NCBI RefSeq assembly: GCF_902713615.1
Contig: NC_052158.1
Span: 18,596,546-18,660,545 of the forward strand
From: Scyliorhinus canicula
Taxonomy: Eukaryota
Length of the DNA stretch: 64,000 nt
Direction of reading: 5' to 3'
Positions 1 through 56,599 of the stretch are shown in pieces (the stretch's first letter is position 1; each line of letters starts with the position of its first letter). Under the pieces are notes generated by a model that searched no databases, was not told the origin of the DNA, and saw nothing but the letters and a program-made list of their open reading frames with translations. A program made the translations under genes and the position numbers.

Positions 1-783
1 CCCGAGGACCGAGCAAGTCAAGATTCACGAGCTCGTGGATTTGCCAGAGTGGCCGGGATACCGATGGTGCAGGGGGCAATCGATTGTGTTCACGTCCCCA
101 TGCGCCCGCCAGCAGGGGACAGGGACGTGTTCACAAACAGGAGGGGGACATACTCCATGAATATCCAGGTGGTATGCGACCCCCACATGAGGATCATGAA
201 CGTCTCTGCAAGGTTCCCAGGGAGTGTGCATGACTCCTACATACTGGTGCAGTCGTTCATCCCTGCGATGTTTGAGGGACGTCCCCCCCGGCTGAGGGGC
301 TGGTTGCTAGGCGACAGGGGTTATCCGCTGAGGTCTTGGCTGATGACGCCTATACGGAGGCCTCAGATCAATGCGGAAACACGATACAACGAGGCCCATG
401 CAGCAACCAGGGGTGTGGTGGAGCGCTGCCTTGGCCTCCTGAAGATGAGATTCAGGTGCATGGACCGCTCCGGAGGGGCCCTGCAGTACCAGGCCGAAAG
501 GGTCGCTCGCATTGTAGTGGTCTGCTGTGCGCTGCACAACATCGCGATGCAGAGGGAAAATGACCTGCTGCAGGAGGCGGAGGGAGAAACCAGTGGCAGT
601 GGTGCCAGCACACTGGAGGAGGAGGAGGAGGAGGAGGAGGAGGAGGAGGCTGGCGGAGTGGCGGGCGCAGAACGCAGACACGACCCAGGTGCTGGTGATG
701 TCCAGGAGGCGGCACAACGGACCTGGCGAGGACGGCGGGCACGCGACGCCTTGGTGGCAGCACGGTTCACGCATCGCATGTGA
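1..783 (+). CDS. Harbinger/PIF transposase (HARBI1-like DDE nuclease), C-terminal ~260 aa, 5'-truncated by the window edge
   Basis: Frame is open from base 1 (PEDRASQDSRARGFARVAGIPMVQGAIDCVHV...). It contains AIDC, NRRGTYSMNIQVVCD, PGSVHDS, LLGDRGY, GVVERC and CCALHN motifs and an acidic tail. Confidence 0.93.
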   Translation, partial: PEDRASQDSRARGFARVAGIPMVQGAIDCVHVPMRPPAGDRDVFTNRRGTYSMNIQVVCDPHMRIMNVSARFPGSVHDSYILVQSFIPAMFEGRPPRLRGWLLGDRGYPLRSWLMTPIRRPQINAETRYNEAHAATRGVVERCLGLLKMRFRCMDRSGGALQYQAERVARIVVVCCALHNIAMQRENDLLQEAEGETSGSGASTLEEEEEEEEEEEAGGVAGAERRHDPGAGDVQEAAQRTWRGRRARDALVAARFTHRM

Positions 784-1351: not shown

Positions 1352-3140
1352 TTACTCAGTGTCTATCTTAGTTGCCTTACGGGCCCTACCACTATGTCTA
1401 AGTGATTCCCCAGATGATACAGCAGGAGTGGAGGAGGATTGCTGCGAATCGCCCCCCTCGACTCGTTTCTCCTTGGCCAAGCGTTTCCTGGGGCGACCCG
1501 GCCTTGATGGGCCAGGCTGCTCTGCGGGCGTCTCGGGTGACATTGTGCCACCCTGCTCTGCCTGCTGCCCACCCGATGCACCAGGGATGGGACGGGGGGA
1601 GGCCGAGAATTCCAGGACGTCCCGTGATGGACTTAATGGGACGGGTCCCGAAACCTCCTCCTCCCTCGGGGAGCCCGGTGGCCCCCGGGCCTCACTTTGG
1701 GACAGAGGTGCGAGCGGGGAGGTGCCCTATCGCACCACCGACACCTGGCGCTGCCAGTCCTGGAGGCCTGCAACGGTATCCACCAGGATCCGAAGGTTTG
1801 CAGAGACGGAGTCCAGGGAGTTAGACATTCCCGCCAGGGACTGTGCGACCTCAACCTGTGAGTGCACAACGCCATCCAGCACATGTGTCAGGCGGTTGAT
1901 GCTCTACGCGACTGACTGCTGGGACTGTGCCATCGACTGCTGGGACTGTGCCATCGACTGCTGGGACTGTGCCATCGACTTCTGTGACTGTGCCATGGCG
2001 TGCTGCGACTGGCCAATGACCTGCTGAGACTCGGCCAAGGCCCGCAGCGCGCCGGCAATGTCGTGTTGGCTCTGGCACATTGCTGCCTGTGAGAGGGCAA
2101 CCCTGTCCAGGGCCGAGGATGACGCGTGCACATTAACCCCAACGCCTTGCATCACCTGACCCATTGCCTCCACCGCAGATGCCATCCGTGCGGTGTCGGA
2201 CTGGGTCTCTGCCATGAGCGGCACCACTCCCTGCTCGTGGACGCGGTTCGACTCCTCTAACAGCGTCTGCAGAGTCTGGAAGGAAGCCCTCATCCCGTCG
2301 TTGTTTCCCTGGGTTTCTTGAGGCATCGGCTGTGCGGGTGGGCTGAGAAACTCCAGGAACTCCGAAAACGTCTGGGAGCCAGCTGCATCCTGGGCCTGGT
2401 CTGGCCTCCGCGAGTCCGGGCCCTCGGTTGCTCCTACCTCCACCTGCTGTACCTGCTCAACTGTGATGTGCAAACCAGACTGTGACCCAGGAGACTCATC
2501 ACTAAATAGGCCCGCCGGGGTGAGTGTCTCTGGGATGATGGATGTCGTGGGAGAAAGCAGTGCCGCAAGCCCGATGTTTTCGCTATTTAGGCCCTCCTCC
2601 AAGGTGTGGGGCCGCTCAGAGTCCGGAGGGTTATCCTTGGCCATTTCCGGGGGTTGTGGTATCGCCACCCTCTGGGCGTCCTGCTCCGCAGATTGGATTG
2701 GGGAGGATGGGGCTGCCCGCTGATCGGGCACCCTCTGTTGTGCGGCCCTGGGTGAGGTGGCGGCAGATGCCTGTGCCCGTCTGCAGCCAGACGGCCCTAG
2801 TCGTTTGGCATCACGTCCTAGGGAAGAGAATGAGACGGGTTATTTAGATTTGCTCGGCAGGCCGCTGGACGGTCCCAGTGGGAAGCGTGTGAAGGGACAG
2901 AGGATGGGGGAGGTATCCCAGTGGTCAGTGTGTGAAGGGACAGAGGATGGAGGAGGTCCCAGTGGGCAGAGTGTGTGAAGGGACAGAGGATGGGGGAGGG
3001 GTGGGTGTTTGTCAAGGAGGGCAGGGTGTGTGAAGGGACAGAGGATGGGGGAGGGGTGGGTGTTTGTCAAGGAGGGTTGTCTCACTTGCTGCAGATCTGC
3101 CAACCTCGCATAGCGCGATATCCCGGGTGGCAGACCTCCC
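1352..3140 (-). pseudogene. Harbinger partner (Myb/SANT-like) gene, 3' exons, convergent with the transposase
   Basis: ORFs 1904-2731 and 1352-1543 are in one frame, broken only by TAG at 1904-1906 and 1727-1729. Acceptor ttctcttccctag|ga lies at 2817 and donor a|gtgaga at ~3086. It has SQQSMAQ heptad repeats, and its exon layout matches the second copy at 48040-49175. Confidence 0.75.
2860..3075. repeat. Minisatellite (gtgtgtgaagggacagaggatggggga..) in the Harbinger partner-gene intron
   Basis: About 5 degenerate tandem copies are visible directly. Confidence 0.8.
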
Positions 3141-3149
3141 AAAAAGGTC

Positions 3150-3849
3150 TGCACAGATCGCAGCCGCAGTTCAACTAGGGAAACGGCGTAAACAAAGCAC
3201 AGCATGCTTTAACAAGACCGTACACCCCACAGAATTCCAGGTTGGGCAACAGGTAATGCTATCTGTATACAACCCCAGCAGTTTTTTGGCACCAAAATAT
3301 TCCGGGCCATATTCAATTTCGGATAAAATTAGCCCCTCAGTTTACAGGATAAAATATCCTAACGGAAAGACCGCGTGGTTCCATATTAACCAGCTAAAGG
3401 CATATGGAACACAGTCCAACCATGCACACCATGTCCTGCTAGACACAGCAGAACACCTCACCCCGCCCACTAGAGACACGTTTCCACCATCCCCCTCACA
3501 GACCAGTTCTTCATTGGACTCGCCCACGACTCCGCCCACTGACCACGACAGACCACGCCCCGAAACGCCCACAAGCTGCCGCAGCAGAGACAGCGATACA
3601 GACACTGACTCTGAGGACAGCCACAGCACACCACACTACAGCCCACACTGCAGCGACTATGACCCCGACTCCAGTGACCCCATGGAAGTCACCTATATTA
3701 AAAACCCAGACCCACCACCCGACCCCGACTACCCCGACAATACCCATTCACTTTTAGCCCAACACTCTGGCACAGGGACAATTCGTACAGACTTGTCCGC
3801 AACGACGAAAGTGACCCCCGGTCACATAATTCAAAAATTTCATGCCTGA
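3150..3849 (+). CDS. Integrase C-terminal (GPY/F) domain plus Pro/Ser/Asp-rich extension; probably continues to 3954 after a frameshift
   Basis: ORF 3064-3849 in the track. An alternative frame WHRDNSYRLV...NPFVTLFTEAEKK* runs to 3954. Confidence 0.75.
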
Positions 3850-5541: not shown

Positions 5542-6553
5542 TGTAGCCACCTAAGATGGACACTGGGCTAACAAAATGGAGAACTGCTAAGACTGTAGGG
5601 AGAAAACAGTTTTAGCCAGGACAAGCAGTCTGCAAAGGCTAATTAGCATTCTGCACGTAGCAAAACTGGTTTATGGCCAGGTGGAAGATCTCAACCAAAG
5701 GTGTAAATAGCAAAACGCTTTGCATAGTAATGAGGCAATCCAGATCTGGGCACACACAATAGCAACATTTGGGTTTGAATGGATACTTTGAGTGGACGCC
5801 CAGACGAAACGGCACCAGAAGTATCCATCACAAAAGACCCTAGAGACCGCCCCACCCATCGAGAAGAGACCCTCAGATTGGGGGATTTGTAAGACATCGA
5901 TTGGGAAATAACCCAATCGATACATGGCAGGTAAAGGCCCGCCCCGAAAAGGCACGGACATTGGGGGCCCTATAAAGATAGACCCCGCACATGGTTCTGT
6001 CTGTTTTTGTGCTCCGGCTTGGACTGCTGCTTTGACTCCGGCCCAGATCTGCTGTTGTATCCTGACTCCGACTCCAGCCGTTGATCCTGTCTTCCATCAC
6101 CAGCCGTTGAGCACCAGCCATTGTTCAGTAAGTCCCAAAACGACGCTCGCTACGTGAACCCAGCATTGCCTATACATTGATCGACTAGTAACGAACAGAA
6201 GGTGCAGCCCAGAAAGGAACAAAGGCCTTGTCCCCTGACCTTGCTGGTTCCTACTTAGATAAGTATTTAGTCGTTTAATAGTAGGAATAGGTATTAGTCT
6301 TTAGCGCGTGCAAGCGTATTTATTATATTTGTATAATAAATATTAATCGTTGGAACTTACTAATCGGTGTATAGTTTTATTACTTTGAACCTGACCTTGA
6401 AATACTTGTGAGGTGTCTATATACGGCACCTGGCGACTCTGAGCTGAAAATACACACACACAGCTGTAGCAGTGTTAAGCACACGGCCTTTAAACGGAGG
6501 CGTGTTAATACACTCCAATAAACGCGTAATACACTCAAGTAAAACGTGCAACA
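5542..6553 (+). mobile_element. 3' LTR (~1012 bp) of the Gypsy element
   Basis: TG...CA termini with imperfect inverted ends directly after the PPT; TATAAA at 5971; AATAAA at 6335. The right end abuts a SINE that is uninterrupted in the paralogous arm (19533). Confidence 0.85.
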
Positions 6554-6769
6554 GTGTCTGCCTGGGTTTCATACCACAACTCAAAGATGTGCAGGTTAGG
6601 TGGATTGGCTATGCTAATTTGCCCCTTAATTGGAAAAAAAAATTGGGTACTCTAAATTTTTTTTAAAAAGTCAATAGTTATGGCTTACAGGGCACAAATT
6701 CTCGAATAGTCTTATGGTCGCTCTCTTGTACTCACCTCACTGCCATGTGTCCACAGCAGGTGGAGACAG

Positions 6770-7240
6770 TATAAAACATTGGTGAACCCACATATGGAGC
6801 AATATGTGCAATTCTAGTCGCCACTTTATAGGAAGGGTGTGATTGCACTAAAGGGGGTGCAGAGGCGATTCACTAGGATGTTGCCTGGGATAAGTTATGA
6901 TCAGAGGTTGGATAGACTTGGGTTGTTTTCGCTGGAGCAGAGAAGACTGAGGGGCGACATGATCGAGGTGTACAAGATAATGAGGGACATGGACAGGGTG
7001 GATAGGGAGCAGCTGTTCCCCTCAGTTGAAGGGTCAGTTACACGGGGACATAAGTTCAAGGTGAGGGGCAGGAGGTTTTGGGGGGATTTGAGGAAAAACT
7101 GTTTTACCCAGAGGGTGATGATGGTCTGGAATGCACTGCCTGGGAGGCTGCTTCACATCCTTTAAAAAGTAACTGGATGCTCACTTGGCACTCATAACAT
7201 TCAAGACTATGGGCCAAGTGCTGGCAAATGGGATTAGGTG
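6770..7240 (+). mobile_element. CR1 LINE 3' fragment
   Basis: VQRRFTR...LGLFSLEQRRLRGDMIEVYK...NCFTQRVMMVWNALP. Confidence 0.88.
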
Positions 7241-7269
7241 GACAGGTCAGATGGTTTTCATGTGTCGGT

Positions 7270-8151
7270 TGTTTTTCTAATTTCACCTATATGTTTTAGA
7301 ATTCCCTTTATACCAAAGAACCTTACGGGCCAATATTCTAAAAACGGCGAACAGGGAACTACCTCCCTGACTCCAGTACAGGCCTCTGAGAGTGCTAATC
7401 GGGTCAAACTCTCCTTTCAAGTTATCCCCCGGTATAACTCCTACCTTCACTGAAGAATTTTACTTACTTACCCCTTAATGGCATTGATGTCCAGGGTCCT
7501 GCGTTCTTAAGGAAGTGAAGTAAGCTAATAACCACTTTTTCAGGTTAAATTATTTTATTATTAACATACTCTTTTTTATCTCATTAAATTAAAAACATTA
7601 TTTACTTTTTGATGTTGTCTGGTTGGTTGGTGAGGCCTTCAGACTCTCTCTCTCTCTCTTTCACTTTCAAGCCTCCTGGTCATCTCTCCTGGTGCAGTTT
7701 TCTCTTTTCCTCCTCTTCTGTCTTCTGTGGCTGCTGTGGCTGCTGCTGTCCTTCTTGCTTCTTCGGGTGCCGCTGGTGTTCTGCTGCTGGTGTCTTTGTT
7801 CTTGCTTCTTGCCTCGTGGGGAGAAAAAGGGGAGGAGTCTGAAGTCCACGCTGGTTTCTTTGTTTCAGCTGTTCTGATCGGGACCTCTGATAAGGATCGG
7901 ACTTCGGGTCTTAAAGGGGCAGTCCATCACAATTTTCCAACAACACAAAGAGATTTTTTAAAACTTTTTTCTTCTGCCTTTCTCCTGCTGCAGGTTGTAA
8001 TAACCATTTTGATAGACTGAAATTGCTGCCCACAGTTTCTGTGCCCTTCAGCTGCCACCAACCTCTTGTGGGATCTTTCCCTGCACTCTCCCCGATCAGA
8101 TGTTGGCAGACCTCTATGTTTCAAATGACACATTCTGTATTTTCCAGAACA
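7270..8151 (-). mobile_element. 3' LTR (882 bp)
   Basis: Minus strand TGTTCTGG...GAAAAACA, preceded by purine tract caagacgggg. The only difference I found from the 5' LTR is one T in a homopolymer (~7572). Confidence 0.95.
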
Positions 8152-9493
8152 CCCCGTCTTGACATTTGAAACATTACTATAATTTGGTTTATTGTCCCCC
8201 CATCCAATTGTACTAACCTACATCCCTGATCATTGTCATTTGTATGCATATCACCGACCAGTGTCAATACGAGTCTTGTTTTCCGTTCCAGTCCAACTTG
8301 TTTTCCATTTCTGATTGGAATGTGGTAATTGTGATATCTTTTACCCCCCACTGATCCCCTAGTCTTATTAATTTAAAATGTTCAATTGATCCTGCTTGTA
8401 TTCCTAACTTCCCCATTAATGTCTAACATTGTCGTGAATCATGTAAGTCTGCCAACCCCTGGTTTACATGAGAGAACATCTTTCTGACAACGTGTATATT
8501 TTTCCTTTCAGCATTTACAAAACCGCATTGAACCGTCTCTTTTTTTTTCTTCCCAAACAAATTCTCCCTATTGTTCTATACATAGTAAAATTTTTATCTT
8601 ATCTTAACACCTTATTCATTACCTAACCAATAGACTGTGTGTTACACTTTACATATTTTCAACTGTTAACAATTTAATATCAATATCGAAACATCGCTTC
8701 TTGGCTTTTGGAACAATCATTATTACATACTAACTAACCCTCTATTAAAACATTCACAGTTTAGAAATGCGGATCAAGTTATTTAACGACACACATACCC
8801 CCCTTCTCATATATATACAACAGTCCCTATCAATTTACATGAAAATAAAAAAATTTTCTTATCAACGATTATAGCTCTTCAATGCAATATTGTTTTGTTG
8901 CATTGGTAACAATTTTCCCGCCGTAGTATCAAGCTACTGAAATTCTTAACCTATTATCATTGATCATATTGGGGTTCCTCGTCAGTCGCTGCTATCTGCT
9001 GCCGAGACCTTAATGATTCCACTGCGTAGTACATACCCCATGGAGACCACAGATCATCCATCAACTAATGTCCAGTTAGAGATGTCTGACCGGGGGTTTC
9101 ACTGTCCAGTCATAATTTGATATTCTAATTTGCATTTAATTCCCTCAAATTTGTAGCCAATTATATCATTAGTTTCCCCCCAATCCTGTCGAACAGATTC
9201 TTCTCTGGAGTGTAGTTCTCTTCCTTCTCGCGAACTGGTTTGTTATTGGAGTGTAGTTCTCTTCCTTCTTGCGACCTGGTTTGTTATTAATTTTTTCCAC
9301 CTGAAAAAGCAAATGAACAGATCAAGGGTGGAGAGGGCCCTATTCTTTAATTCGGATTATCCCAGAAGTGCCCTCTCCAGGACTTCCGGATTCCTTTTGC
9401 CATCATTTCTTTTTGAACTGGTTTATATTCCATATCCTTGATGTAGTCAAGCCTCCTTCTGTCATTGCACCCCTGAGTGAGATTCGAAGAATC

Positions 9494-11070
9494 TCAAACT
9501 CCTCTGATGCTCACTGGGTCGTGTGTTTCAAGCGTGACACAATTTCTTTTGCTCCAGACACCATGCTTCTCTAATTCAATTGTATGTGTACCCAGAATCT
9601 GAACAATCTTGTCTTTACATTTTACAGTCTCGCGAATGATTTTCCCCGCAGTCTTAGTTGGTAACTTCACCCAAACTTCGTCTCCTACTTGATAATTCCC
9701 AGATTCACTTGGGTCTCCTTGTCCCTGGGGGACAGAGGTTCCAAGGTTGCTATTAAGATCAAATACTATTCTTTCAATGTCTTTATCCCAGCCTTTATTA
9801 TTCTGATTCTTTATGATCCAATCCTTTACTTTTCTTACAGACCTCTCAGCCATTCCATTACTCTCAGGTGCATATTTCACGGCCCAATTGATTGTTATTC
9901 CTCTGTCAGCACAAAAGTTAATAACAGTATTGTTTCTAAAGTGTGGCGCGTTGTCCATTCGGATCGATTCTGTATCCTTTCCTGTGGTCTTAGTGCTGCT
10001 ATTATCTGGCCTTGTGTTTCTGTGCTGTTCCTTACCCTACTCATGGCTCTTCCGAAACTGTCATACCCTTTGCTCATTTGCCAAATTTTAGCTTTGGGGG
10101 TAACGTTTGGTAATTCCAGTAATTTCGTAGAATCAATTTGTTGACTTCCGCCTAATATTTCTCCTATTTTAAGTCCCCTAGCTGTAACCTCTCTTTCCCA
10201 TCCTTCCTGATCTCTATGGTGTACCATTTCTGCTTCTGGATTATAAATATAATACGGTACATCCTTATTTACTGGTTGATAAGTGGAAGGTTGTTGGTGT
10301 TTCCAGTGATCGCTATAATCCCCTATTTCTAATGGTTTAGAATTTTTTCTATTCCCTATTCCTCTCTTTGGTTTGACTATTTCCTCATTCTCGGATGAGG
10401 ATGATAATTCTTCCTGTCCCATCACAGGAGGCGCCATAATCCCAACTATGCCTTGTTCCTCTTCACTTTCTTGTGGTTCAACGAAATGATCGATAAACGC
10501 TTCTTTCTTATGTGTGGCAGATTGCTGAGGCCAATTTTCTTCCTGAAACAGACTTGGATCTGGGTATGGAAAATTGTATCCCGTTGGGAAATTTTCACAG
10601 GAGTCCGAATTCTCTCGGCTATCTGATTCTAGGCCTGATTCCTCGTCACTTTCCATTTCTAATGGTTCATTTTTCTGCAGTTGTTTTATATATTTGCCTA
10701 CCACTTCAGAGTTACTTTTGTGTTTACTAGGGATCTGTATTATTTCTGTCCTGTTTACTCCGTCAATGATTTTAATCAGTTTGGAACACACTTTGCCCAC
10801 TTGAGCAGCTGCATGCTTCTGTCTGTGTCCAAATACGATTAGTGATTCAGCTCGCTTTTCAAATGCAAACTGACAAAGTGCTTTAAGGACCCTGACTGAA
10901 TCTGTATATTGCAGGGCTTTTGGCACTCTAACAAAGAGGGAGATATCTCCGTCTGGATACATATCGCTTGTCCAGGATTTCTTTTGCTCTTTTAATTTCT
11001 TCCATTCCCTTTTCATTTCTACATTTCTCTTGACCGTATCCCAGGGCATGAGAATTACCCTAATTGCCAT
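9494..11070 (-). CDS. Pol-derived protein (~525 aa after repairing one 1-nt deletion at ~9972): degenerate RNase H/tether-like N-terminus, acidic linker, integrase-like C-terminus
   Basis: ORFs 9895-11115 (ATG at 11070, gaaaATGG) and 9494-9958 join as RIPESIRMDNAPHF if one base is restored. MDN...MAER is an exact D(35)E spacing, and YQVGDEVWVK is a GPY/F-like motif. N-terminal homology is weak. Confidence 0.7.
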
Positions 11071-11496
11071 TTTCGGATTTTTAGTTCTGTTCCTGGTTGT
11101 CCCTTTCAGGTGCACTCTGAAATTAAGGATAAGTACCCTTTCTGGGCCCTATCCAAGGCTGACCAAGGCACTATCTTCCTGCTCTAGTTAAGGGTCGATT
11201 GATTATTGGTTTCTGAATATAAGCGTCCCTATTTTCCAGAAAATGTCCGCACAATCCGCCTTACTCTGAGGATGATTTATTCTTTAGCCCCTTTTACCAG
11301 TGATGGATGCAAGATTTTAGTGCTATCACCAAAATGTCTTGCAGACTTTTTCTCAGGGTCAGTATCTTCTAGTCTACTGATTTTCACACCCAACCTGAGC
11401 TTCAGTCCCCTCGATCCACAGAATATCCTTACAAAAGCCAATCACACCTGACTTTCCAAACTAAACTCGGCAGGTAAAGTTTGACTCACACATAGA

Positions 11497-11873
11497 CTAG
11501 AAACTTCTAATATTCTAGCCTTTTTGCCGGTTAGAAACTTCTAATATTCCACCCGTTTCTTGGGAACTAGAAACTTCTAATATTCTAGCCCCTACTCTGC
11601 TTAACTAGAAACTTCTAATATTCTAGCCTCGCTTTACCTAGAAACTTCTAATATTCTAGGCTTTTCTTGGGAACTAGAAACTTCTAATATTCTAGCCCCT
11701 ACTCTGCTTAACTAGAAACTTCTAATATTCTAGCCTCGCTTTACCTAGAAACTTCTAATATTCTAGGCCTTTCTTGGGAACTAGAAACTTCTAATATTCT
11801 AGCCCCTACTCTGCTTAACTAGAAACTTCTAATATTCTAGCCTCGCTTTACCTAGAAACTTCTAATATTCTAG
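11497..11873. repeat. Array of 11 copies of the 22-bp core CTAGAAACTTCTAATATTCTAG with three cycling spacers (107-bp higher-order unit)
   Basis: Higher-order units start at 11567, 11674 and 11781; the spacers are cccctactctgcttaa, cctcgctttac and gc(c/t)tttcttgggaa. Confidence 0.95.
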
Positions 11874-11874
11874 G

Positions 11875-11892
11875 CCTCCACGCTGGGCGCCA
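11875..11892 (-). promoter_or_regulatory. Primer-binding site, tRNA-Lys(CUU)-like
   Basis: TGGCGCCCAGCGTGGAGG versus the Lys1,2 PBS TGGCGCCCAACGTGGGGC (15/18), with no spacer after the LTR CA. Confidence 0.82.
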
Positions 11893-12773
11893 TGTTTTTC
11901 TAATTTCACCTATATGTTTTAGAATTCCCTTTATACCAAAGAACCTTACGGGCCAATATTCTAAAAACGGCGAACAGGGAACTACCTCCCTGACTCCAGT
12001 ACAGGCCTCTGAGAGTGCTAATCGGGTCAAACTCTCCTTTCAAGTTATCCCCCGGTATAACTCCTACCTTCACTGAAGAATTTTACTTACTTACCCCTTA
12101 ATGGCATTGATGTCCAGGGTCCTGCGTTCTTAAGGAAGTGAAGTAAGCTAATAACCACTTTTTCAGGTTAAATTATTTTATTATTAACATACTCTTTTTA
12201 TCTCATTAAATTAAAAACATTATTTACTTTTTGATGTTGTCTGGTTGGTTGGTGAGGCCTTCAGACTCTCTCTCTCTCTCTTTCACTTTCAAGCCTCCTG
12301 GTCATCTCTCCTGGTGCAGTTTTCTCTTTTCCTCCTCTTCTGTCTTCTGTGGCTGCTGTGGCTGCTGCTGTCCTTCTTGCTTCTTCGGGTGCCGCTGGTG
12401 TTCTGCTGCTGGTGTCTTTGTTCTTGCTTCTTGCCTCGTGGGGAGAAAAAGGGGAGGAGTCTGAAGTCCACGCTGGTTTCTTTGTTTCAGCTGTTCTGAT
12501 CGGGACCTCTGATAAGGATCGGACTTCGGGTCTTAAAGGGGCAGTCCATCACAATTTTCCAACAACACAAAGAGATTTTTTAAAACTTTTTTCTTCTGCC
12601 TTTCTCCTGCTGCAGGTTGTAATAACCATTTTGATAGACTGAAATTGCTGCCCACAGTTTCTGTGCCCTTCAGCTGCCACCAACCTCTTGTGGGATCTTT
12701 CCCTGCACTCTCCCCGATCAGATGTTGGCAGACCTCTATGTTTCAAATGACACATTCTGTATTTTCCAGAACA
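11893..12773 (-). mobile_element. 5' LTR (881 bp)
   Basis: Direct repeat of 7270-8151; the ORF-track translations of both copies are identical; directly followed on the minus strand by the PBS. Confidence 0.95.
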
Positions 12774-13082
12774 CGGTACAGACCCGATGGGCAGAAGGGC
12801 CTCTTCTGCACTGTATTATTCTGTGCTTCTGTAAAGTGCTGAGTCATGCTTAAGTAATCTGATAATTATTTGAAGGTACATTAAAAAGACTAGAAAAGAG
12901 GTGGGATGCCTCACATCCTTAAAAAAGTACCTCGCTGAGTGCTTGGCACACCATACAATTCAAGGCTATGGGCAAGTGCTGGCAAATGGGATTAGGAGGG
13001 CAGGTGACATTTCTGGGTTGGTGGAGACTCGACGGGCCGAGAACACTGTAGTGTTCTGTGATTCTGTGAATGTAGAAAGAAT

Positions 13083-13450
13083 GCACGGTAGCATGGTGAT
13101 TAGCATAAATGCTTCACGGTAGCATGGTGATTAGCATAAATGCTTCACAGCTCCAGGGTCCCAGGTTCGATTCCCGGCTGGGTCACTGTCTGTGCGGAGT
13201 CTGCACGTCCTCCCCTTGTGTGCGTGGGTTTCCTCCGGGTGCTCCGGTTTCCTCCCACAGTCCAAAGATGTGCGGGTTAGGTGGATTAGCCATGCTAAAT
13301 TGCCCGTAGTGTCTTAAAAAGTAAGGTTAGGGGGGGGGTTGTTGGGTTACGGGTATAGGGTGGATACGTGGGTTTGAGTAGAGTGATCATGGCTCGGCAC
13401 AACATCGAGGGCTGAAGGGCCTGTTCTGTGCTGTACTGTTCTGTGTTCTA
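13083..13450 (+). mobile_element. HE1-like V-SINE with a tandemly duplicated 31-bp 5' segment
   Basis: B box ggttcgattccc, V-domain core gtgggtttcctccgggtgctccggtttcctcccaca, CR1-like tail. Confidence 0.88.
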
Positions 13451-13529
13451 ATGTAGAAGAAGGACCTGGACAGGCGAGGAGAGTGGGCAAAGACATGGCA
13501 GATGGAATACAACTTAGAAAAGTGTGAAT

Positions 13530-14611
13530 CTGTAGTCGATGGACTTTACAAGGATGAGGTGGGAAAGTGAGATGTTTGCGGTCCAGGCGAGGGGACAGGA
13601 GAGGTGATTGGGGGAGCTGCCGTTCAGATTAGTAGGGGGAAGCTTTAGGTACCTTGGCATTCAAGTGGCGCGGGAATGGGACCGGCTGCATAAATTAAAT
13701 CTGGCCCGACTAGTAGACCAAATAAAGGACGACATTCGGAGATGGGACACGCCTCCGTTATCACTGGCTGGAAGGGTGCAGACGGTGAAGATGACAGTCC
13801 TCCCGAGATTCCTGTTCGTGTTTCAAGGTCTCCCCGTCTTTATTCCGTGGTCCTTTTTTAAACGGGTCAACAAAGTGATCACTGGCTTTGTTTGGGCGGG
13901 CAAGACCCCGCGAGTAAGGAAGGTAATGCTTGAGCAGAGTCGAGGAGACAGCGGGCTGGTGCTGCCAAATTTTAGTAACTATTACTGGGCGGCGAATATA
14001 GCCATGATCAGGAAGTGGGTGGTGGTGGGGGGAAAGGGGCGGTTGGCATGGGAGTCTATGGAGGCGGCTTCATGCAAGGGCACCAGTCTGGGGGCGTTGG
14101 TAACTGCGCCTCTGCCGTTTCCGCCAGCACGGTATTCCACCAACCCCGGGGTAGTGGCGGCCCTGAGAGTCTGGGGGCAATGGAGGAGACATGTGGGAGC
14201 AGAGGGAGCATCGGTCTGGTCCCCAATCTGTATTGGGTTTGCCCCGGAAAGTATGGATGGGGGGGGGGGTTTGGATATGGCGGAGAGCAGGGATTGAAAG
14301 TATTGGGGATATGTTTATAGAGGGGAGCTTTTCGAGAATGAGGACGCTGGAGGAGAAGTTTGGGTTGGCGAGGGGAAACAAATTCAGATACTTGCAGGTG
14401 CGAGACTTCCTATGTAGACAGGTATCAACCTTCCCGCTCCGACCACCAAGGGGGATTCAGGACAAGGTAGTTTCCAGAGTGTGGGTAGGAGAAGGGATCG
14501 TCTCGGATATTTATAAGGAGCTATGGGGTCAGAGGAGACGCAGACTGAGGAGCTGAAGCGCAAGTGGGAGGAGGAGCTGGGAGGTGGGATAGAGGATGGT
14601 CTATGGGCAGA
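13530..14611 (+). mobile_element. L1/Tx1-clade LINE ORF2 fragment (post-RT region), frameshifted
   Basis: FRYLGIQV...LSLAGRVQTVKMTVLPRFLFVFQ...GLVLPNFSNYYWAANI. Confidence 0.88.
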
Positions 14612-17996: not shown

Positions 17997-19533
17997 CGTG
18001 CAGACTCCGCACAGACAGTGACCCAGCTGGGAATCGAACCTGGGATCCTGGAGCTGTGAAGCATTTATGCTAACCACCATGCTACCGTGAAGCATTTATG
18101 CTAACCACCATGCTACCGTGAAGCATTTATGCTAACCACCATGCTACCGTGCATTCTTTCTACATTCACAGAATCACAGAACACTACAGTGTTCTCGGCC
18201 CGTCGAGTCTCCACCAACCCAGAAATGTCACCTGCCCTCCTAATCCCATTTGCCAGCACTTGCCCATAGCCTTGAATGTTATGGTGTGCCAAGCACTCAG
18301 CCAGGTAATTTTTTAAGGATGTGAGGCATCCCACCTCTTTTCTAGTCTTTTTAATGTACCTTCAAATAATTATCAGATTACTTAAGCATGACTCAGCACT
18401 TTACAGAAGCACAGAATAATACAGTGCAGAAGAGGCCCTTCTGCCCATCGGGTCTGTACCGACACATGAAAACCATCTGACCTGTCCACCTAATGGGGCA
18501 GCACGGTAGCATTGTGGATAGCACAATCGCTTCACAGCTCCAGGATCCCAGGTTCGATTCTGGCTTGGGGCACTGTCTGTGCGGAGTCTGCACATCCTCC
18601 CCGTGTGTGCGTGGGTTTCCTCCGGGTGCTCCGGTTTCCTCCCACAATCCAAAGATCTGCAGGTTAGGTGGATTGGCTATGATAAATTGCCCTTAGTGTC
18701 CAAATTTGCCCTTAGTGTTGGGTGGGGTTACTGGGTTATGGGGATAGGGTGGAGTTGTTGACCTTGGGGAGGGTGCTCTTTCCAAGAGCCGGTTCAGACT
18801 CGATGGGCTGAATGGCCTCCTTCTGCACTGTAAATTCTATGATTCTATGATTCTAATCCCATTTGCCAGCACTTGGCCCATAGCCTTGAATGTTATGAGT
18901 GCCAAGTGAGCATCCAGGTACTTTTTAAAGGATGTGAAGCAGCCTCCCAGGCAGTGCATTCCAGACCATCATCACCCTCTGGGTAAAACAGTTTTTCCTC
19001 AAATCCCCCCAAAACCTCCTGCCCCTCACCTTGAACTTATGTCCCCGTGTAACTGACCCTTCAACTAAGGGGAACAGCTGCTCCCTATCCACCCTGTCCA
19101 TGTCCCTCATTATCTTGTACACCTCGATCATGTCGCCCCTCAGTCTTCTCTGCTCCAGCGAAAACAACCCAAGTCTATCCAACCTCTGATCATAACTTAT
19201 CCCAGACAACATCCTAGTGAATCGCCTCTGCACCCCCTTTGGTGCAATCACATCCTTCCTATAAAGTGGCGACTAGAATTGCACACAGTGCTCCATATGT
19301 GGGTTCACCAATGTTTTATACTGTCGCCACCTGCTGTGGACACATGGCAGTGAGGTGAGTACCAAAGAGTGACCATAAGACTATTCGAGAATTTGTGCCC
19401 TGTAAGCCATAACCATTGATTTTAAAAAAAATTTAGAGTACCCAATTTTTTTTCCAATTAAGGGGCAATTTAGCATAGCCAATCCACCTAACCTGCACAT
19501 CTTTGCGTTGTGGTATGAAACCCAGGCAGACAC
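17997..19533 (-). repeat. Right arm of the inverted duplication, carrying its own SINE insertion
   Basis: Reverse complement of 6554-7269 plus 12778-13207. Confidence 0.92.
18495..18852 (+). mobile_element. Full-length V-SINE inserted only in the right arm
   Basis: TSD CTAAT at 18490-18494 and 18853-18857; the empty site ggattaggtggac is at ~7231-7243. Confidence 0.92.
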
Positions 19534-24316: not shown

Positions 24317-24645
24317 CGCAGCACGGTAGCACAAGTGGATAGCACTGTGGCTTTACAGTACCAGGGTCCCAGGTTCGATTCCCCGCTGGGTCACTGTCTG
24401 TGCTGAGTCTGCACATTCTCCCCGTGTCTGCGTGGGTTTCCTCCGGATGCTCTGGTTTCCTCCCACAGTCCAAAGATGTGCAGGATAGGTGGATTGGCCA
24501 TGCTAAATTGCCCTTAGTGACCAAAAAAGGATAGGAGGGGTTATTGAGTTATGGGGATAGGGTGGAAGTGAGGGCTTAAGTGGGTCGGTGCAGACTCGAT
24601 GGGCCAAATGGCCTCATTCTGCACTGTATATTCTATGTTCTATAA
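24317..24645 (+). mobile_element. HE1-like V-SINE
   Basis: Same consensus as the other copies. Confidence 0.87.
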
Positions 24646-24814
24646 TGTAAAATTCTATGATCTTGGGGTCACTCATCCCTAAGAGTTCTTTTACAGCTAG
24701 ATTATTAATTAGCACTCTTCAAGACATAAGACTAGATCGAGAATAGCCTCTCCTCTAATGGGCTCCTTAACATACTGCTCTAAAAATCCATCTCTAGCAC
24801 ACTCAAAAAACCCC

Positions 24815-31222: not shown

Positions 31223-31577
31223 TGGGGGCAGCACAGTAGCATGGTGGTTAGCATAAATGCTTCACAGCTCCAGGGTCCCAGGTTCGATTCCCGGCTGGGT
31301 CACTGTCTGTGTGGAGTCTGCACGTCCTCCCCGTGTGTGCATGGGTTTCCTCCGGGTGCTCCGGTTTCCTCCCACAGTCCAAAGATGTGCAGGTTAGGTG
31401 GATTGGCCATGCTAAATTGCCCGTAGTGTCCTAATAGTAAGGTTAAGGGGGGGGTTGTTGGGTTACGGGTATAGGGTGGATATGTGGGTTTGAGTAGGAT
31501 GATCATTGCTCGGCACAACATCGAGGGCCGAAGGGCCTGTTCTGTGCTGTACTGTTCTATGTTCTATGTTCTATGAC
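31223..31577 (+). mobile_element. HE1-like V-SINE
   Basis: Full consensus with (ttctatg)n tail. Confidence 0.88.
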
Positions 31578-39057: not shown

Positions 39058-39245
39058 CACTTAGGTTTAGCTGGTTTAGCTCACAAGGCTAAATCGCTGG
39101 CTTTTAAAGCAGACCAAGCAGGCCAGCAGCACGGTTCGATTCCCGTACCAGCCTCCCCGGACAGGTGCCGGAATGTGGCGACTAGGGGCTTTTCAGAGTA
39201 ACTTTATTGAAGCCTACTCGTGACAATAAGCGATTTTCATTTTTC
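39058..39245 (+). mobile_element. Short tRNA-derived SINE of another family
   Basis: A-box-like ggtttagctca, B box ggttcgattccc, tail shared with the variant V-SINEs. Confidence 0.65.
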
Positions 39246-41551: not shown

Positions 41552-43100
41552 GCAATAACGACGTGCTCACTGAAGCTTAGTTTGGGTTCTGCCAGGGACA
41601 CTCAGCCTCTTACATCATTTCAGTCTTGGTTCAAACATGGACAAAAGAGCTGAACTCAAGAGGTGAGGTGAGAGTGACTGCCCTTGACATCAAGCCAGTA
41701 TTCAATTGAGTATAACATAGAAAAACTGGAGTCAATGGAAAAGCTCTGCTGGTTGGAGTCACACCTGGCGCAAAGGAAGATGGTGTGGTTGGAGGAGGTC
41801 AATCATCTCAGCTCCAGGACATCACTGTTGGATTTACTCAGGGAAGAGAGAAGCAAAAATAGACATTGGACCTCTGGAAAATGTGGCTGGACAAGTAATA
41901 ATAGGAAACAAAGAGATGGCAGAGGAACTGAATTGTTACTTTGCATCAGTCTTCACGGTGGAAGACACCAGTGGGACACCTGAGCTCCAGGAGAATCAAG
42001 GGGCAGAGGTGAGTGCAGTGACCATCACTAAGGAGAATGTTCTGGGTAAACTGAAAGGTATGAAGGTGGATAAATCACTTGGACTGGATGGACCACAACC
42101 CAGGGTCCAAAAAGAGATAACTGAGGAGATTGTGGAGGCATTGGTGGTGATCTTTCAGGAATCACTGGAGGCAGGGACGGTGCCAGAGGACTGGAAAGTG
42201 GAAAATGTAACACCACTGTTTAAGAAGGGAGGGAGGCAGAAGATGGGAAATTACAGGCCGGTTAGCCAGACTTCGGTTATTGGTAAGATTTTAGAGTCCA
42301 TTATTAAAGATGAGATCGCGGAGTACTTGGAACTGCATGGTAAAATAGGACTGAGTCAGCACGGCTTTGTCAAAGGGAGGTCATGTCTGGCAAATCTGTT
42401 AGAGTTCTTTGAAAACGTAACAAGGAAGTTAGACAAAGGAGAACCAGTGGACGTGATTTATTTAGATTTTCAGAAGGCCTTTGACAAGGTGCCGCATACG
42501 AGGCTGTTAAATAAGTTAAGAGCCAATGGTGTTAAAGGTAAGATCCTGGTATGGATAGAGGATTGGCTGACTGGCAGAAGGCAGAGAGTGGGGATAAAGG
42601 GGTCTTTTTCAGAATGGCAGCCGGTGACTAGTGGTGTGCCTCAGGGGTCTGTGCTGGGACCTCAATTTTTCACAACATACATTAATGATTTGGAAGAAGG
42701 AACTGAAGGCACTGTTACTCAGTTTGCAGATGATACAAAGATCTGTAGAGGGGCAGGTAGTATTGAGGAAGCAGGCAGGCTGCAGAAGGACTTGGACAGG
42801 CTAGGAGAGTGGGCAAAGAAGTGGCAGATGGAATACAATGTGGAAAAGTGTACAGTTATGCACTTTGGAAGGAGAAATGGGGGCATAGACTATTTTCTAA
42901 ATGGGGAAATGCTCAGGAAATCAAAAGCACAAAGGGACTTGGGAGTCCTTGTTCATGGTTCACTTAAGGTTTATGTGCAGGTTGAGTCAGCAGTTAGGAA
43001 GGCAAATGCAATGTTAGCATTCATGTCGAGAAGGCTAGGATACAAGAGCAGGGATGTACTTCTGAGGCAGTATAAGGCTCTGGTCAGACTCCATTTAGAA

Positions 43101-43410
43101 CATAGAACATACAGTGCAGAAGGGGGCCATTCGGCCCATCGTGTCTGCACCAACCCACTCACTTCCACCCTATCCCTGTAACCCAATAACCCCTCCTAAC
43201 ATTTTTGGGCATGAAGGGCAATTTAGCATGGCCAATCCACCCAACCTGCACGTCTTTGGACTGTGGGAGGAACCGGAGCACCCGTAGGAAACCCACGCAG
43301 ACACGGGGAAAATGTGCAAACTCCGCACAGTCAGTGACCCAGCGGGGAATGGAACCTGGGACCCTGGAGTTGTGAAGCCACAGTGCTAGCCACTTGTGCT
43401 ACTGTGCTGC
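43101..43410 (-). mobile_element. V-SINE inserted in CR1
   Basis: Reverse complement of the consensus, splitting VRLHLE|YC. Confidence 0.85.
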
Positions 43411-44283: not shown

Positions 44284-45376
44284 AGAAGGATGAGAGGGGA
44301 TCTTATTGAAACTTACAGTATACGGCGAGGCCTCGATAGAGTGGATGTAGAGAGGATGTTTCCACTTGTAGCAATAACTAGACGCAGAGGGTGCAATCTC
44401 AGACTAAAGGAACGATCCTTTAAAACAGAGGTGAGGAGGAATTTCTTCAGCCAGAGGGTGGTGAATCTGTGGAACTCTTTGCCGCAGAATGCTGTGGAGG
44501 CCAAAACACTGAGTGTCTTTAAAACAGAGAAAGATGGCAGCACGGTGGCGCAGTGTGTAACACTGCTGTCTCACAGCGCTGAGGTCCCAGGTTCGATCCT
44601 GGCTCTGGGTCACTGTCTGTGTGGGGTTTCCACATTTTCCCCGTGTGTGCTCCTACAGCCCATAAATGTGCAGGGCAGGTGGATTGACCATGCTAAATTG
44701 TCCCTTAATTGGAAAAAAATGAATTGGGTACTCTAAATTAAAAGAAAGCAGAGAAAGATAGGTTCTTGATTAATAAGGGGATCAGTTCGAATCCTGCCCT
44801 GGGTCAATGACCGTGTGGAGTTTGCACATTCTCCCCCTGTCTGCGTGGGTTTCACCGCCACACCCAAAGATGTGCAGGTTAGGTGGATTGGCCACACTAA
44901 ATTGCCCCTTAATTGGAAAAAAAATAATTGGGTACTCTAAATAAAAAAGATTTTTAAATAAGGGGATCATGGATTATGGAGAGAAGGCAGGAGAATGGGG
45001 ATGAGAAAAATATCAGCCATGATTGAATGGGGGAGCAGGCTCGATGGGCCGAGTGGCCTAATTCTGCTCCTATGTCTTATGGTCTTATTGGGTAGTGTCC
45101 TTAGCCCAACCATCTTCAGCTGTCTCATGAATGGTTTTTCTTTCATCAGAAGGTCAAAAGTGGGAATGGTTATTGGTGACTGCAGAAAGTTCCGAATCAT
45201 TCACGACCCCTCCAGTGAAGCAGTCCATGTCCGAATGCAGCAAGACCTGGACAATACCCAGGCTTGGGCTAACAAGTAACATTCGTGCCACACAAGTGGC
45301 AGGGAGTGACCATCTCCAACAAGAGAGTATCTAACCATTGCCCTTTGTTATTAAATGGCATGACCATCACTGAGTT

Positions 45377-45728
45377 GGGCAGCAGGGTAGCATGGTGGTT
45401 AGCATAAATGCTTCACAGCTCCAGGGTCCCAGGTTCGATTCCCGGCTGGGTCACTGTCTGTGTGGAGTCTGCACGTCCTCCCCCTGTGTGCGTGGGTTTC
45501 CTCCGGGTGCTCCGGTTTCCTCCCACAGTCCAAAGATGTGCGGGTTAGGTGGATTGGCCATGTTAAATTGCCCGTAGTGTCCTAATAAAAAAAGTAAGGT
45601 TAAGGGGGAGGTTGTTGGGTTACGGGTATAGGGTGGATACGTGGGTTTGAGTGGGGTGATCATGGCTTGGCACAACATTGAGGGCCAAAGGGCCTGTTCT
45701 GTGCTGTACTGTTCTATGTTCTATGTTC
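45377..45728 (+). mobile_element. HE1-like V-SINE
   Basis: Full consensus. Confidence 0.87.
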
Positions 45729-56013: not shown

Positions 56014-56365
56014 CTGGGCAGCACGGTAGCATGGTGGTAAGCATAAATGCTTCACAGCTCCAGGGTCCCAGGTTCGGTTCCCGGCTGGATCACTGTCTGT
56101 GTGGAGTCTGCACGTCCTCCCCGTGTGTGCGTGGGTTTCCTCCGGGTACTCCGGTTTCCTCCCACAGTTCAAAGATGTGCGGGTTAGGTGGATTGGCCAT
56201 GCTAAATTGCCCATAGTGTCCCAAAAAAATAAGGTTAGGGGGGGGTTGTTGGGTTACGGGTATAGGGTGGATACGTGGGTTTGAGTGGAGTGATCATTGC
56301 TCGGCACAACATCGAGGGCCGAAGGGCCTGTTCTGTTCTGTACTGTTCTATGTTCTATGTTCTAT
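56014..56365 (+). mobile_element. HE1-like V-SINE
   Basis: Full consensus. Confidence 0.87.
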
Positions 56366-56599
56366 GAACGGTCTCATCTGCTACGGGCTGCCGAAGACTG
56401 ATATGTTTTTAATTAACCTTTCCCTTGTCAACATTCTGCCTTTGGAAGCCACCAAGTCTCATCCCCACACATTTAATGGAATTGTCTGTGCATTATGGCT
56501 CCCCACCAGTACCCTGGGCTTCCCTTCCCTCTGTGAGCCCTTCTAAAAAGCCTAGGGACCGGCGGTAGAAAGCATTCTCAAGATCAGTGCTTTTCAGAC

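What the first reader, a model, noticed from the sequence alone, without database searches (positions are those of the whole stretch)
7270..12773. Freshly inserted LTR element that lacks gag, protease, RT and env: a new non-autonomous family
Seen: the LTRs differ by only one homopolymer base, the CGGT TSD is intact, a Lys-type PBS and a PPT are present, and the paralogous arm holds the empty site. The 3.7-kb interior has one long ORF, a repeat array and no RT, protease or CCHC motif. Known: LTRs are identical at insertion, so the event is recent. Inference: the element is mobilised in trans by an unseen helper, yet it keeps a ~1.6-kb protein-coding region instead of shrinking to a TRIM/LARD.
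Basis: partly seen in the sequence, partly recalled or inferred. Interest (0 to 1): 0.85.

Follow-up and report, generated by a model that had tools for sequence, protein, structure and literature searches.

The report
Young defective LTR element in catshark
This is a real, very recently inserted retrovirus-like element in a catshark-type genome that has lost its copying enzymes but keeps one family-specific gene and a dead integrase stub, an ordinary kind of parasitic "hitch-hiker" element from a family I could not find described.

Summary
Two LTRs (882 and 881 bp) differ by one T in a T-run. They end TG..CA and are flanked by a 4-bp CGGT duplication. An inverted paralogous arm at 18458-18461 shows the empty site.

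The element reads on the minus strand. An 18-nt tRNA-Lys-type primer binding site abuts the right-hand LTR. A short purine tract abuts the left-hand LTR.

The 3,741-bp interior gives no Pfam signal for RT, protease, RNase H, Gag, CCHC or Env in any frame. So this is a deletion derivative of a pol-bearing ancestor.

The 406-codon ORF has relatives only in Scyliorhinus canicula and S. torazame. Two of them carry a diverged Macro domain that this copy lacks. One S. canicula relative shares the Macro-less layout. One S. torazame gene model, spread over 16.8 kb, joins the ORF to the same integrase type. This favours a family over a private deletion.

No genomic DNA of other copies could be fetched, so copy number, the helper and Dfam/Repbase novelty remain untested. 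Closest analogues are mouse IAP 1-delta-1, ETn/MusD, VL30 and MaLR. Interest is moderate.

The parts
7266..7269 (.). Target-site duplication, left copy (CGGT)
   Evidence: Read directly. The paralogous empty site carries one CGGT.
7270..8151 (-). 3' LTR in the element's sense orientation (left-hand LTR), 882 bp, TG..CA ends
   Evidence: identical to the other LTR except for one T in a T-run.
8152..8160 (-). Short purine tract (8 of 9 purines) abutting the 3' LTR; a weak PPT candidate
   Evidence: Position is right; length and purity are poor.
8161..9493 (-). AT-rich 3' interior with no long open frame and no Pfam signal; includes a 41-bp x2.4 tandem repeat at 9190-9288
9494..10036 (-). pol remnant: integrase-like open segment (distal catalytic core with D-35-E spacing, plus a C-terminal part). 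A broken gene, given as one part.
   Evidence: Pfam rve, rve_3 and DDE_3 match below their cut-offs. 85 distinct PDB sequences match at E<=1; all 60 listed are retroviral integrases, best E 1e-4. A 19-aa stretch is 84% identical to P0004 of S. torazame.
9895..11115 (-). Long ORF of 406 codons from GTG. The probable start is the ATG at 11070 (391 codons), the same Met that opens relative P0002. Family-specific protein with no Pfam, PDB or PHROG match.
   Evidence: Relatives occur only in Scyliorhinus.
11116..11495 (-). Non-repetitive part of the leader, between the repeat array and the ORF
   Evidence: no long open frame.
11496..11877 (-). Leader repeat array: 107 bp x3.6, equal to 11 copies of a 22-nt quasi-palindrome with 11/14/16-nt spacers, starting at the 3' edge of the PBS
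   Evidence: 11 matches, 0 expected by chance, none elsewhere in the window. The sense RNA folds into about 11 equal hairpins.
11875..11892 (-). Primer binding site, tRNA-Lys type, directly after the 5' LTR
   Evidence: One search gives the 18-mer. It matches 16 of 18 positions of the tRNA-Lys PBS quoted in PMC4261875; see also PMC6669660.
11893..12773 (-). 5' LTR in the element's sense orientation (right-hand LTR), 881 bp
   Evidence: It has a single AATAAA at LTR position 592 and a single TATAAA at 839 on the sense strand. U3/R/U5 borders are not defined.
12774..12777 (.). Target-site duplication, right copy (CGGT)
17997..19533 (-). Inverted paralogous arm holding the empty site (single CGGT at 18458-18461). 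It carries its own ~340-bp SINE-like insertion at 18510-18849.

Best explanation
This is a recently integrated, replication-defective (non-autonomous) copy of a retrovirus-like LTR element family. In the data I could reach, the family is confined to Scyliorhinus catsharks.

Read on the minus strand, the layout is: 5' LTR, tRNA-Lys-type PBS, a leader with 11 near-identical hairpin repeats, a 391-406-codon family-specific ORF, a dead integrase stub, 1.3 kb of non-coding sequence, a weak purine tract, and the 3' LTR.

Shown:
- It integrated by an integrase-type reaction (TG..CA ends, 4-bp duplication, empty site in the paralogue).
- It integrated after the two arms diverged.
- It has no reverse transcriptase, protease or RNase H.

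Inferred:
- The RNA that was copied already lacked those genes. Reverse transcription and integration were therefore supplied in trans by an autonomous relative that is not in this window.
- The retained cis signals are what let it be copied: LTRs, PBS, purine tract and perhaps the hairpin array as a packaging or dimerisation module.
- The ORF is kept open because it helps the element's own propagation, or did so until very recently.
For: - Structure and empty site.
- Age: no substitution between the LTRs over 881 bp, against 1.6-2.6% divergence between the flanking arms.
- No RT, PR, RNase H, Gag, CCHC or Env in any of 46 open segments on both strands.
- Integrase remnant with D-35-E spacing.
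- Family rather than private event, point 1: P0001 (S. canicula, 87% identical over 230 aa, no gaps) has the same Macro-less layout through to the ORF's C-terminal region.
- Family, point 2: P0002 (S. canicula) and P0003 (S. torazame) are Macro-bearing variants.
- Family, point 3: P0004 (S. torazame) joins the ORF's N-terminal part to the same integrase type.
- Well-documented precedents exist for trans-mobilised deleted ERVs: IAP 1-delta-1, ETn/MusD and VL30/MLV (PMC6466679).
Against: - No DNA of any other copy could be read. Copy number, shared LTRs and the absence of RT in the relatives' loci are therefore unknown.
- P0001-P0004 are automatic gene models. Some span several kb and may join unrelated pieces.
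- No helper was identified.
- The purine tract is weak.
- The promoter and R region of the LTR were not located. The only TATAAA lies downstream of the only AATAAA.
- LTR identity could in principle reflect gene conversion or assembly collapse.
- The integrase hits are all below the Pfam gathering scores.
Confidence: 0.7

Rival explanations
1. Private deletion: a full-length provirus inserted here and lost gag-pro-pol-env afterwards by one or a few internal deletions. On this view there is no non-autonomous family and no trans-mobilisation.
For: The integrase stub shows that the ancestor had pol. No other copy's DNA was seen.
Against: - The LTRs show no substitution, so little time was available.
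- The 1.3-kb 3' interior is already devoid of frames. In a young insertion, that state must have been inherited.
- P0001 at another S. canicula locus shares the Macro-less ORF layout at only 87% identity, so the layout is older than this insertion.
- P0004 in a second species also links the ORF and the integrase.
Confidence: 0.08
2. The ORF is a highly diverged Gag, for example of a foamy-like lineage, which lacks CCHC. The element would then be a gag-plus-pol-stub deletion form like mouse IAP 1-delta-1. This concerns the ORF's identity and is compatible with the best explanation.
For: - The ORF is the first one after the leader.
- A Lys-type PBS is typical of foamy viruses (PMC4261875, PMC6669660).
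- Foamy-like ERVs exist in S. canicula (PMC10699275).
- IAP 1-delta-1 shows that such fusion ORFs can be kept (PMC6466679).
Against: - No Gag family in Pfam, no PDB match and no CCHC.
- The low-confidence AlphaFold model gives an alternating strand-helix N-terminal domain, not an all-helical one.
- Relatives carry a Macro domain in the middle of the protein, which is not a known Gag feature.
Confidence: 0.25
3. The ORF, with the Macro domain seen in relatives, is a captured cellular or foreign gene that replaced viral genes. The layout would then be that of a transducing defective retrovirus. This also concerns origin and is compatible with trans-mobilisation.
For: - The ORF has no retroviral homology.
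- The relatives' Macro domain is a cellular/viral enzyme fold.
- Teleost epsilon-like ERVs are reported to carry macro-domain and CNPase ORFs (Basta et al. 2009, as summarised in PMC4977317).
Against: - A search of 1.84 billion representative proteins found no cellular homologue of the window's ORF. The two annotated Scyliorhinus protein sets supplied only the four element-like relatives.
Confidence: 0.2
4. The element belongs to a Gypsy/Ty3-type LTR retrotransposon lineage, not to a retrovirus-derived ERV.
For: A tRNA-Lys PBS is also used by Drosophila Gypsy (PMC1635307). The Pfam rve, rve_3 and DDE_3 hits do not discriminate. By general knowledge, 4-bp duplications occur in both groups.
Against: All 60 PDB matches listed for the integrase stub (of 85 at E<=1) are retroviral integrases, though the PDB is biased towards them. 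The Tf2-like integrase fragment elsewhere in the window is unrelated.
Confidence: 0.2

Closest known systems
Mouse IAP 1-delta-1 elements
   Same: An internally deleted provirus that is non-autonomous yet is the most active subtype. It retains an ORF running towards the pol remainder and depends on full-length relatives in trans (PMC6466679).
   Different: In IAP the ORF is a clear gag-pol fusion. Here the ORF has no recognisable gag, the integrase stub is in another frame, and the parent is unknown.
ETn/MusD and VL30/MLV pairs (mouse)
   Same: Non-autonomous LTR elements that share cis signals with a coding-competent ERV and are mobilised by it. They are still insertionally active (PMC6466679).
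   Different: By general knowledge, ETn and VL30 interiors are essentially non-coding. This element keeps a 391-406-codon ORF.
MaLR (mammalian apparent LTR retrotransposons)
   Same: A large non-autonomous group with only traces of retroviral homology in a short interior, related to a class III ERV (PMC6466679).
   Different: A different host clade and no sequence relation. Here a definite integrase remnant is present.
Teleost epsilon-like ERVs with macro-domain or CNPase ORFs (Basta et al. 2009)
   Same: Fish retroviral elements with an extra ORF encoding a Macro-domain protein (PMC4977317). Relatives P0002 and P0003 of this family have a Macro-like domain.
   Different: The window copy itself has no Macro segment. 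The host is a shark. The position of the gene in the teleost elements could not be read because the original paper is not held.
TRIM and LARD elements (plants)
   Same: Non-autonomous LTR elements with LTRs, a PBS and a PPT only.
   Different: By general knowledge, TRIMs are tiny and LARDs have long non-coding interiors. This one has 882-bp LTRs and a 3.7-kb interior with a long ORF and a pol stub.
Foamy-like ERVs of catshark (ERV-Spuma.0-Sca)
   Same: Same host genus (PMC10699275). The Lys-type PBS is typical of foamy viruses.
   Different: No sequence comparison was possible. The LTR (882 bp) is slightly below the 950-1700 nt quoted as typical (PMC6669660). The integrase stub matches foamy integrase no better than lentiviral ones.

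Membership tests
LTR retroelement (structural definition) | Two direct long terminal repeats ending TG..CA | tested here: met
LTR retroelement (structural definition) | Short target-site duplication, shown against an empty site | tested here: met
   CGGT on both sides and a single CGGT at 18458-18461.
LTR retroelement (structural definition) | tRNA-complementary PBS directly after the 5' LTR | tested here: met
   The 18-mer at 11892..11875 matches 16 of 18 positions of the tRNA-Lys PBS quoted in PMC4261875. No shark tRNA-Lys gene was available for a direct test.
LTR retroelement (structural definition) | Polypurine tract directly before the 3' LTR | tested here: inconclusive
   Only 9 nt with 8 purines.
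Autonomous retrovirus / LTR retrotransposon | Reverse transcriptase, RNase H and protease domains | tested here: not met
   No RVT, RNase_H or RVP hit in 46 open segments on both strands at E<=0.1.
Autonomous retrovirus / LTR retrotransposon | Complete integrase (zinc-binding domain plus a full D,D-35-E core) | tested here: not met
   Only the distal core and C-terminal part are recognisable, in a frame separate from the upstream ORF.
Non-autonomous ERV family mobilised in trans (ETn, VL30, IAP 1-delta-1 type) | Several copies with the same deleted interior at different loci | tested here: inconclusive
   Protein-level relatives at two other S. canicula loci and two S. torazame contigs. One shares the Macro-less layout. 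No DNA was available.
Non-autonomous ERV family mobilised in trans (ETn, VL30, IAP 1-delta-1 type) | An autonomous partner sharing LTR, PBS and leader | not testable with these tools
   The shark assemblies could not be fetched. There is no helper in the window.
Spumaretrovirus-like (class III) ERV | Pol phylogeny placing it with foamy viruses | not testable with these tools
   RT is absent. The integrase stub is too short and divergent; there were no hits in the 5.8-billion-protein search.
Spumaretrovirus-like (class III) ERV | tRNA-Lys(1,2) PBS | tested here: met
   Not diagnostic, because Gypsy uses it too.
Macro-domain-bearing fish ERVs | A Macro domain encoded inside the element | tested here: not met
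   P0002 residues 152-260 have no counterpart in the window. Macro is seen only in relatives P0002 and P0003, below the Pfam cut-off, though all top PDB profile hits are macrodomains.
TRIM / LARD | No coding capacity in the interior; TRIM also has very short LTRs and interior | tested here: not met
   882-bp LTRs and a 3.7-kb interior with a 406-codon ORF.

The most novel reading that the evidence does not exclude
A catshark-restricted retrovirus-like lineage in which the gene in the gag position is not a canonical Gag. It would instead be a protein with an alpha/beta N-terminal domain and a Macro (ADP-ribose-binding or -removing) domain. A Macro-less, pol-less parasitic derivative, carrying an 11-fold hairpin array next to its PBS as an amplified packaging signal, would still be transposing in the germ line today.
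Probability: 0.2. Interest if true: 0.65.

Novelty: new member of a known kind. Interest (0 to 1): 0.4.

Why it matters
Evidence of current or very recent LTR-element activity in a shark genome is scarce. An insertion with no substitution between its LTRs and an empty paralogous site is a clean marker for insertion polymorphism in catshark, a developmental model species.

The family adds a cartilaginous-fish example to the mammalian cases in which defective, helper-dependent ERVs outcompete their parents. Its relatives suggest that Macro-domain genes in fish retroelements are not limited to teleosts. That bears on how retroelements meet ADP-ribosylation-based host defences.

None of this changes a paradigm. 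Helper-dependent deleted ERVs that keep an odd ORF are well known.

Tried and rejected
- Genomic DNA of the relatives (GCA_902713615.2 and GCA_003427355.1) could not be fetched because the files are too large.
- Exact look-ups of the window's ORFs, in three forms, found nothing on record.
- Pfam, PDB and PHROG searches of the 406-aa ORF and of its N- and C-terminal pieces gave nothing. My impression that the ORF's C-terminal end is the first half of the integrase core has no tool support, and I dropped it.
- A search of the 180-aa integrase segment against 5.8 billion proteins gave no hit.
- AlphaFold models were too poor to use: pLDDT 32.8 for the integrase segment and 40.7 for the ORF.
- Foldseek on the ORF model gave only generic alpha/beta matches, none at E<=0.001. 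I treat these as uninformative.
- Rfam found nothing in 6000-14000.
- Metagenome and IMG/VR scans with the protein alignment, and a metagenome scan with an LTR-PBS 21-mer, found nothing.
- Basta et al. 2009 is not held.
- The Daphnia hit P0005 and the low-complexity hit P0006 were rejected as short-motif or compositional matches.
- The single loose Y/F/L/M-x-D-D match lies downstream of the integrase stub, in a segment without any RT hit, so I take it as chance.
- The RVT_1 ORF at 41883-43181 and the Tf2-like integrase at 3064-3849 are unrelated to the element.


Full report
**1. Is it there?**

Yes. The repeat finder and a pairwise alignment show two direct repeats, 7270-8151 (882 bp) and 11893-12773 (881 bp). 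They are identical except for one T in a T-run. They begin TG and end CA. The four bases CGGT stand directly outside both ends, at 7266-7269 and 12774-12777.

A BLAST of the flanks against the window finds an inverted paralogous arm. The left flank 6554-7237 matches 19533-18853 at 97.4%, and 7233-7269 matches 18494-18458 at 100%. The right flank 12774-13207 matches 18461-17997, with 98.4% identity over its first 375 bp. The two matches overlap by exactly four bases, 18458-18461.

Reading that spot shows the uninterrupted sequence with a single CGGT. This is an empty site. It proves both the borders and the duplication. The paralogous arm has its own ~340-bp SINE-like insertion at 18510-18849.

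I cannot tell whether the two arms are a local inverted duplication or two copies of a ~1.1-kb repeat. The logic of the empty site is the same either way.

**2. Orientation and cis signals**

The element reads on the minus strand. Directly after the right-hand LTR, reading downwards from 11892, comes an 18-mer. It equals 16 of 18 positions of the tRNA-Lys primer binding site quoted for mammalian foamy viruses in PMC4261875. A similar Lys PBS is quoted for a reptile endogenous foamy virus in PMC6669660.

No tRNA-Lys gene was available in the window for a direct test. The same PBS type is used by Drosophila Gypsy (PMC1635307), so it does not name a genus.

Before the other LTR there is only a 9-nt tract with 8 purines. 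The position is right, but it is a weak PPT.

On the sense strand the LTR has a single AATAAA at LTR position 592 and a single TATAAA at 839. That is the wrong order for U3-R-U5. The promoter and R region are therefore not identified.

**3. Leader array**

From 11877 down to 11496, starting at the 3' edge of the PBS, lies a 107-bp x3.6 array. It resolves into 11 copies (10 exact) of a 22-nt quasi-palindrome with 11/14/16-nt spacers. The motif occurs nowhere else in the window, with 0 expected by chance.

The sense RNA folds into about 11 equal hairpins, with z = -7.1 against shuffles. That z-score is inflated, because any tandem palindrome folds well. Rfam has nothing here.

The array sits between the PBS and the first ORF, where retroviruses keep their packaging and dimerisation signals (general knowledge). 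I therefore propose, as inference only, that it is an amplified packaging or dimerisation module or a transcription-factor array.

**4. Coding content**

The 3,741-bp interior (39% GC) has one long open frame on the minus strand, 9895-11115 (406 codons from GTG). The probable start is the ATG at 11070, the same Met that opens relative P0002.

I scanned every open segment of 35 aa or more on both strands (46 segments) against Pfam. The only retroelement signals are weak integrase-core hits (rve, rve_3, DDE_3; E 5e-4 to 0.02, all below the gathering scores), and all fall in one segment, 9497-10036. There is no RT, RNase H, protease, Gag, zinc knuckle or Env. A regular-expression scan finds no CCHC.

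The integrase reading is backed by the PDB search. 85 distinct sequences match at E<=1. All 60 listed are retroviral integrases: lentiviral, deltaretroviral and foamy. The best has E 1e-4. The alignments run from the second catalytic Asp to the Glu, and the query has exactly 35 residues between them.

- Protease, RT and RNase H are absent. This is a deletion; the number of events is unknown.
- Integrase is a remnant. It lacks a recognisable zinc-binding domain and the first part of the core.
- The remnant is separated from the upstream ORF by one change of frame.
- The remnant has no internal stop within its 180-codon open segment.
- No env-like frame remains.

The element is a deletion derivative of a pol-bearing ancestor.

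**5. Relatives of the ORF**

The 5.8-billion-protein search found two proteins, both from Scyliorhinus canicula:
- P0001, LOC119963594, 87% identity.
- P0002, LOC119967918, 82% identity over the N-terminal 151 aa.

The exhaustive HMMER search of 1.84 billion representatives added only two more:
- P0003, S. torazame scyTo_0023154, which UniRef names 'Macro domain-containing protein'.
- P0004, S. torazame scyTo_0021318.

The remaining two hits are not relatives. One is a Daphnia repeat protein and the other is a low-complexity protein.

The alignment shows a modular protein: an N-terminal domain of about 150 aa, an acidic linker, and a middle segment present in P0002 and P0003. P0003 continues into the C-terminal half that the window shares; in P0002 that part reads in a different frame.

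The middle segment hits Pfam Macro at E 0.004-0.005, below the cut-off. As a two-sequence profile, its top-scoring PDB hits are macrodomains or designed proteins aligned over the same N-terminal stretch: a Thermus protein, alphavirus nsP3 and coronavirus Mac1. E-values are 0.006-0.03, with the typical Gly-rich motif aligned.

The window copy and P0001 lack this segment. P0002 residues 152-260 have no counterpart anywhere in the window. P0004 joins the N-terminal part to a stretch 84% identical to the window's integrase stub, although its gene model spans 16.8 kb.

Three conclusions follow:
- (a) The ORF and this integrase type belong together in two species.
- (b) A Macro-less layout exists at a second S. 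canicula locus at only 87% identity, so it is older than this insertion.
- (c) Several deletion forms coexist.

These are automatic gene models, and I could not read their DNA. The family argument is therefore suggestive and not proven.

The window ORF aligns to P0001 over 230 aa and to P0002 over 151 aa without any gap or stop, despite 13-18% amino-acid divergence. This is weak evidence that the frame is kept by selection. It is weak because gene models choose open frames.

**6. What the ORF is**

This is unknown. There was no match in Pfam, PDB or PHROGs, whether whole or in pieces.

AlphaFold with the five-sequence alignment gave pLDDT 40.7. The N-terminal 20-150 residues scored 52-63 and were predicted as alternating strand-helix. 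Foldseek found only generic alpha/beta folds, none significant. I draw no conclusion from this beyond 'not obviously an all-helical Gag'.

Three readings remain open and are listed as rivals or sub-hypotheses: a diverged Gag, a standing accessory gene of the lineage, or a captured gene.

Macro-domain and CNPase ORFs have been reported in teleost epsilon-like ERVs (Basta et al. 2009, as summarised in PMC4977317). The original paper is not held.

**7. Age**

There are no substitutions in 881 aligned LTR positions. The 95% upper bound on divergence is about 3/881 = 0.34%. Using the 1.5e-9 per site per year adopted for jawless fish in PMC10699275, that gives roughly 1.1 My or less. A slower shark rate would stretch this bound proportionally. 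The rate is an assumption.

The single T-run difference may be a sequencing error. The flanking arms differ by 1.6-2.6%, so the insertion is younger than their split.

**8. How it most likely works**

Shown: integration with a 4-bp duplication, and the absence of the enzymes needed for reverse transcription.

Inferred: the template RNA was already defective. The reasoning is that a young insertion cannot have decayed this far, and the layout recurs elsewhere. An autonomous relative therefore supplied Gag, RT and integrase in trans.

Candidates are the foamy-like or epsilon-like ERVs reported in sharks (PMC10699275; PMC4977317). Nothing here identifies the helper, and none is in the window.

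**9. Comparison with known systems**

The closest working analogues are the mouse non-autonomous ERVs reviewed in PMC6466679:
- IAP 1-delta-1: a deletion creates a novel fusion ORF, the element is helper-dependent, and it is the most active subtype.
- ETn, mobilised by MusD.
- VL30, mobilised by MLV.
- MaLR, which retains only traces of retroviral homology.

The element is not a TRIM or a LARD. Membership of a retroviral genus cannot be tested without RT.

**10. Novelty and score**

The kind is well known. The family appears undescribed in the literature I could search, but Dfam and Repbase were not available. I file it as a new member of a known kind, with interest 0.4. The Macro-bearing relatives and the hairpin array are the points that could raise it.

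**11. Slips and transparency**

- While reasoning, I twice recalled from memory short stretches of known retroviruses: primer-binding-site letters and a piece of an integrase. I entered none of them in any tool and used none as evidence. The PBS comparison above rests only on letters quoted by a paper.
- Alignment tools printed consensus lines by themselves. I used none.
- One search printed the bounds of open segments of the interior so that they could be passed to Pfam. I do not list breaks in this report.
- No repaired, joined or consensus sequence was built.

Noticed in passing
window 11496-11877: The leader array consists of 11 copies of a 22-nt quasi-palindrome that begins at the 3' edge of the PBS. 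As RNA it forms about 11 equal hairpins. The motif is absent from the rest of the window.
   Followed up: partly
P0002 and P0003 (Scyliorhinus relatives; not in the window): Relatives of the ORF carry a diverged Macro domain between the acidic linker and the C-terminal half. Top PDB profile hits are macrodomains or designs over the same stretch (E 0.006-0.03). The window copy and P0001 lack it.
   Followed up: partly
window 7270-8151 / 11893-12773 (sense = minus strand): On the sense strand the LTR has its only AATAAA upstream of its only TATAAA. It also has a long purine-rich, CAG-like stretch in the middle. U3/R/U5 could not be assigned.
   Followed up: partly
window 9190-9288: A 41-bp x2.4 tandem repeat lies in the non-coding 3' part of the interior.
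   Followed up: no
window 13115-13454, 18510-18849, 24318-24647, 31226-31576, 45373-45728, 56012-56367 and others: A ~340-bp SINE-like repeat family has many copies at 78-95% identity. One copy interrupts the paralogous arm next to the empty site.
   Followed up: no
window 49-783 (+): An ORF with a Harbinger/PIF-type DDE transposase domain (DDE_Tnp_4, E 2e-38), in a GC-rich (60%) stretch.
   Followed up: no
window 3064-3849 (+): An ORF with a Tf2-like integrase SH3 / p58 C-terminal domain, a fragment of a Gypsy/Ty3-type element. It is unrelated to the integrase stub of the finding.
   Followed up: partly
window 41883-43181 (+): A 432-codon ORF with a reverse transcriptase domain (RVT_1, E 4e-33). 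The neighbouring ORFs have no Pfam hit, and the element type was not determined. It has no similarity to the finding's ORFs beyond one weak chance-level match.
   Followed up: partly
window 39069-39156 (+): ARAGORN calls a tRNA-Phe(aaa)-like structure of 88 nt. It may be a tRNA-derived repeat and not a gene.
   Followed up: no
window 6554-7269 + 12774-13207 versus 19533-17997: A pair of inverted arms of about 1.1 kb at 97-98% identity. They are either a local inverted duplication or two copies of an unclassified repeat.
   Followed up: partly
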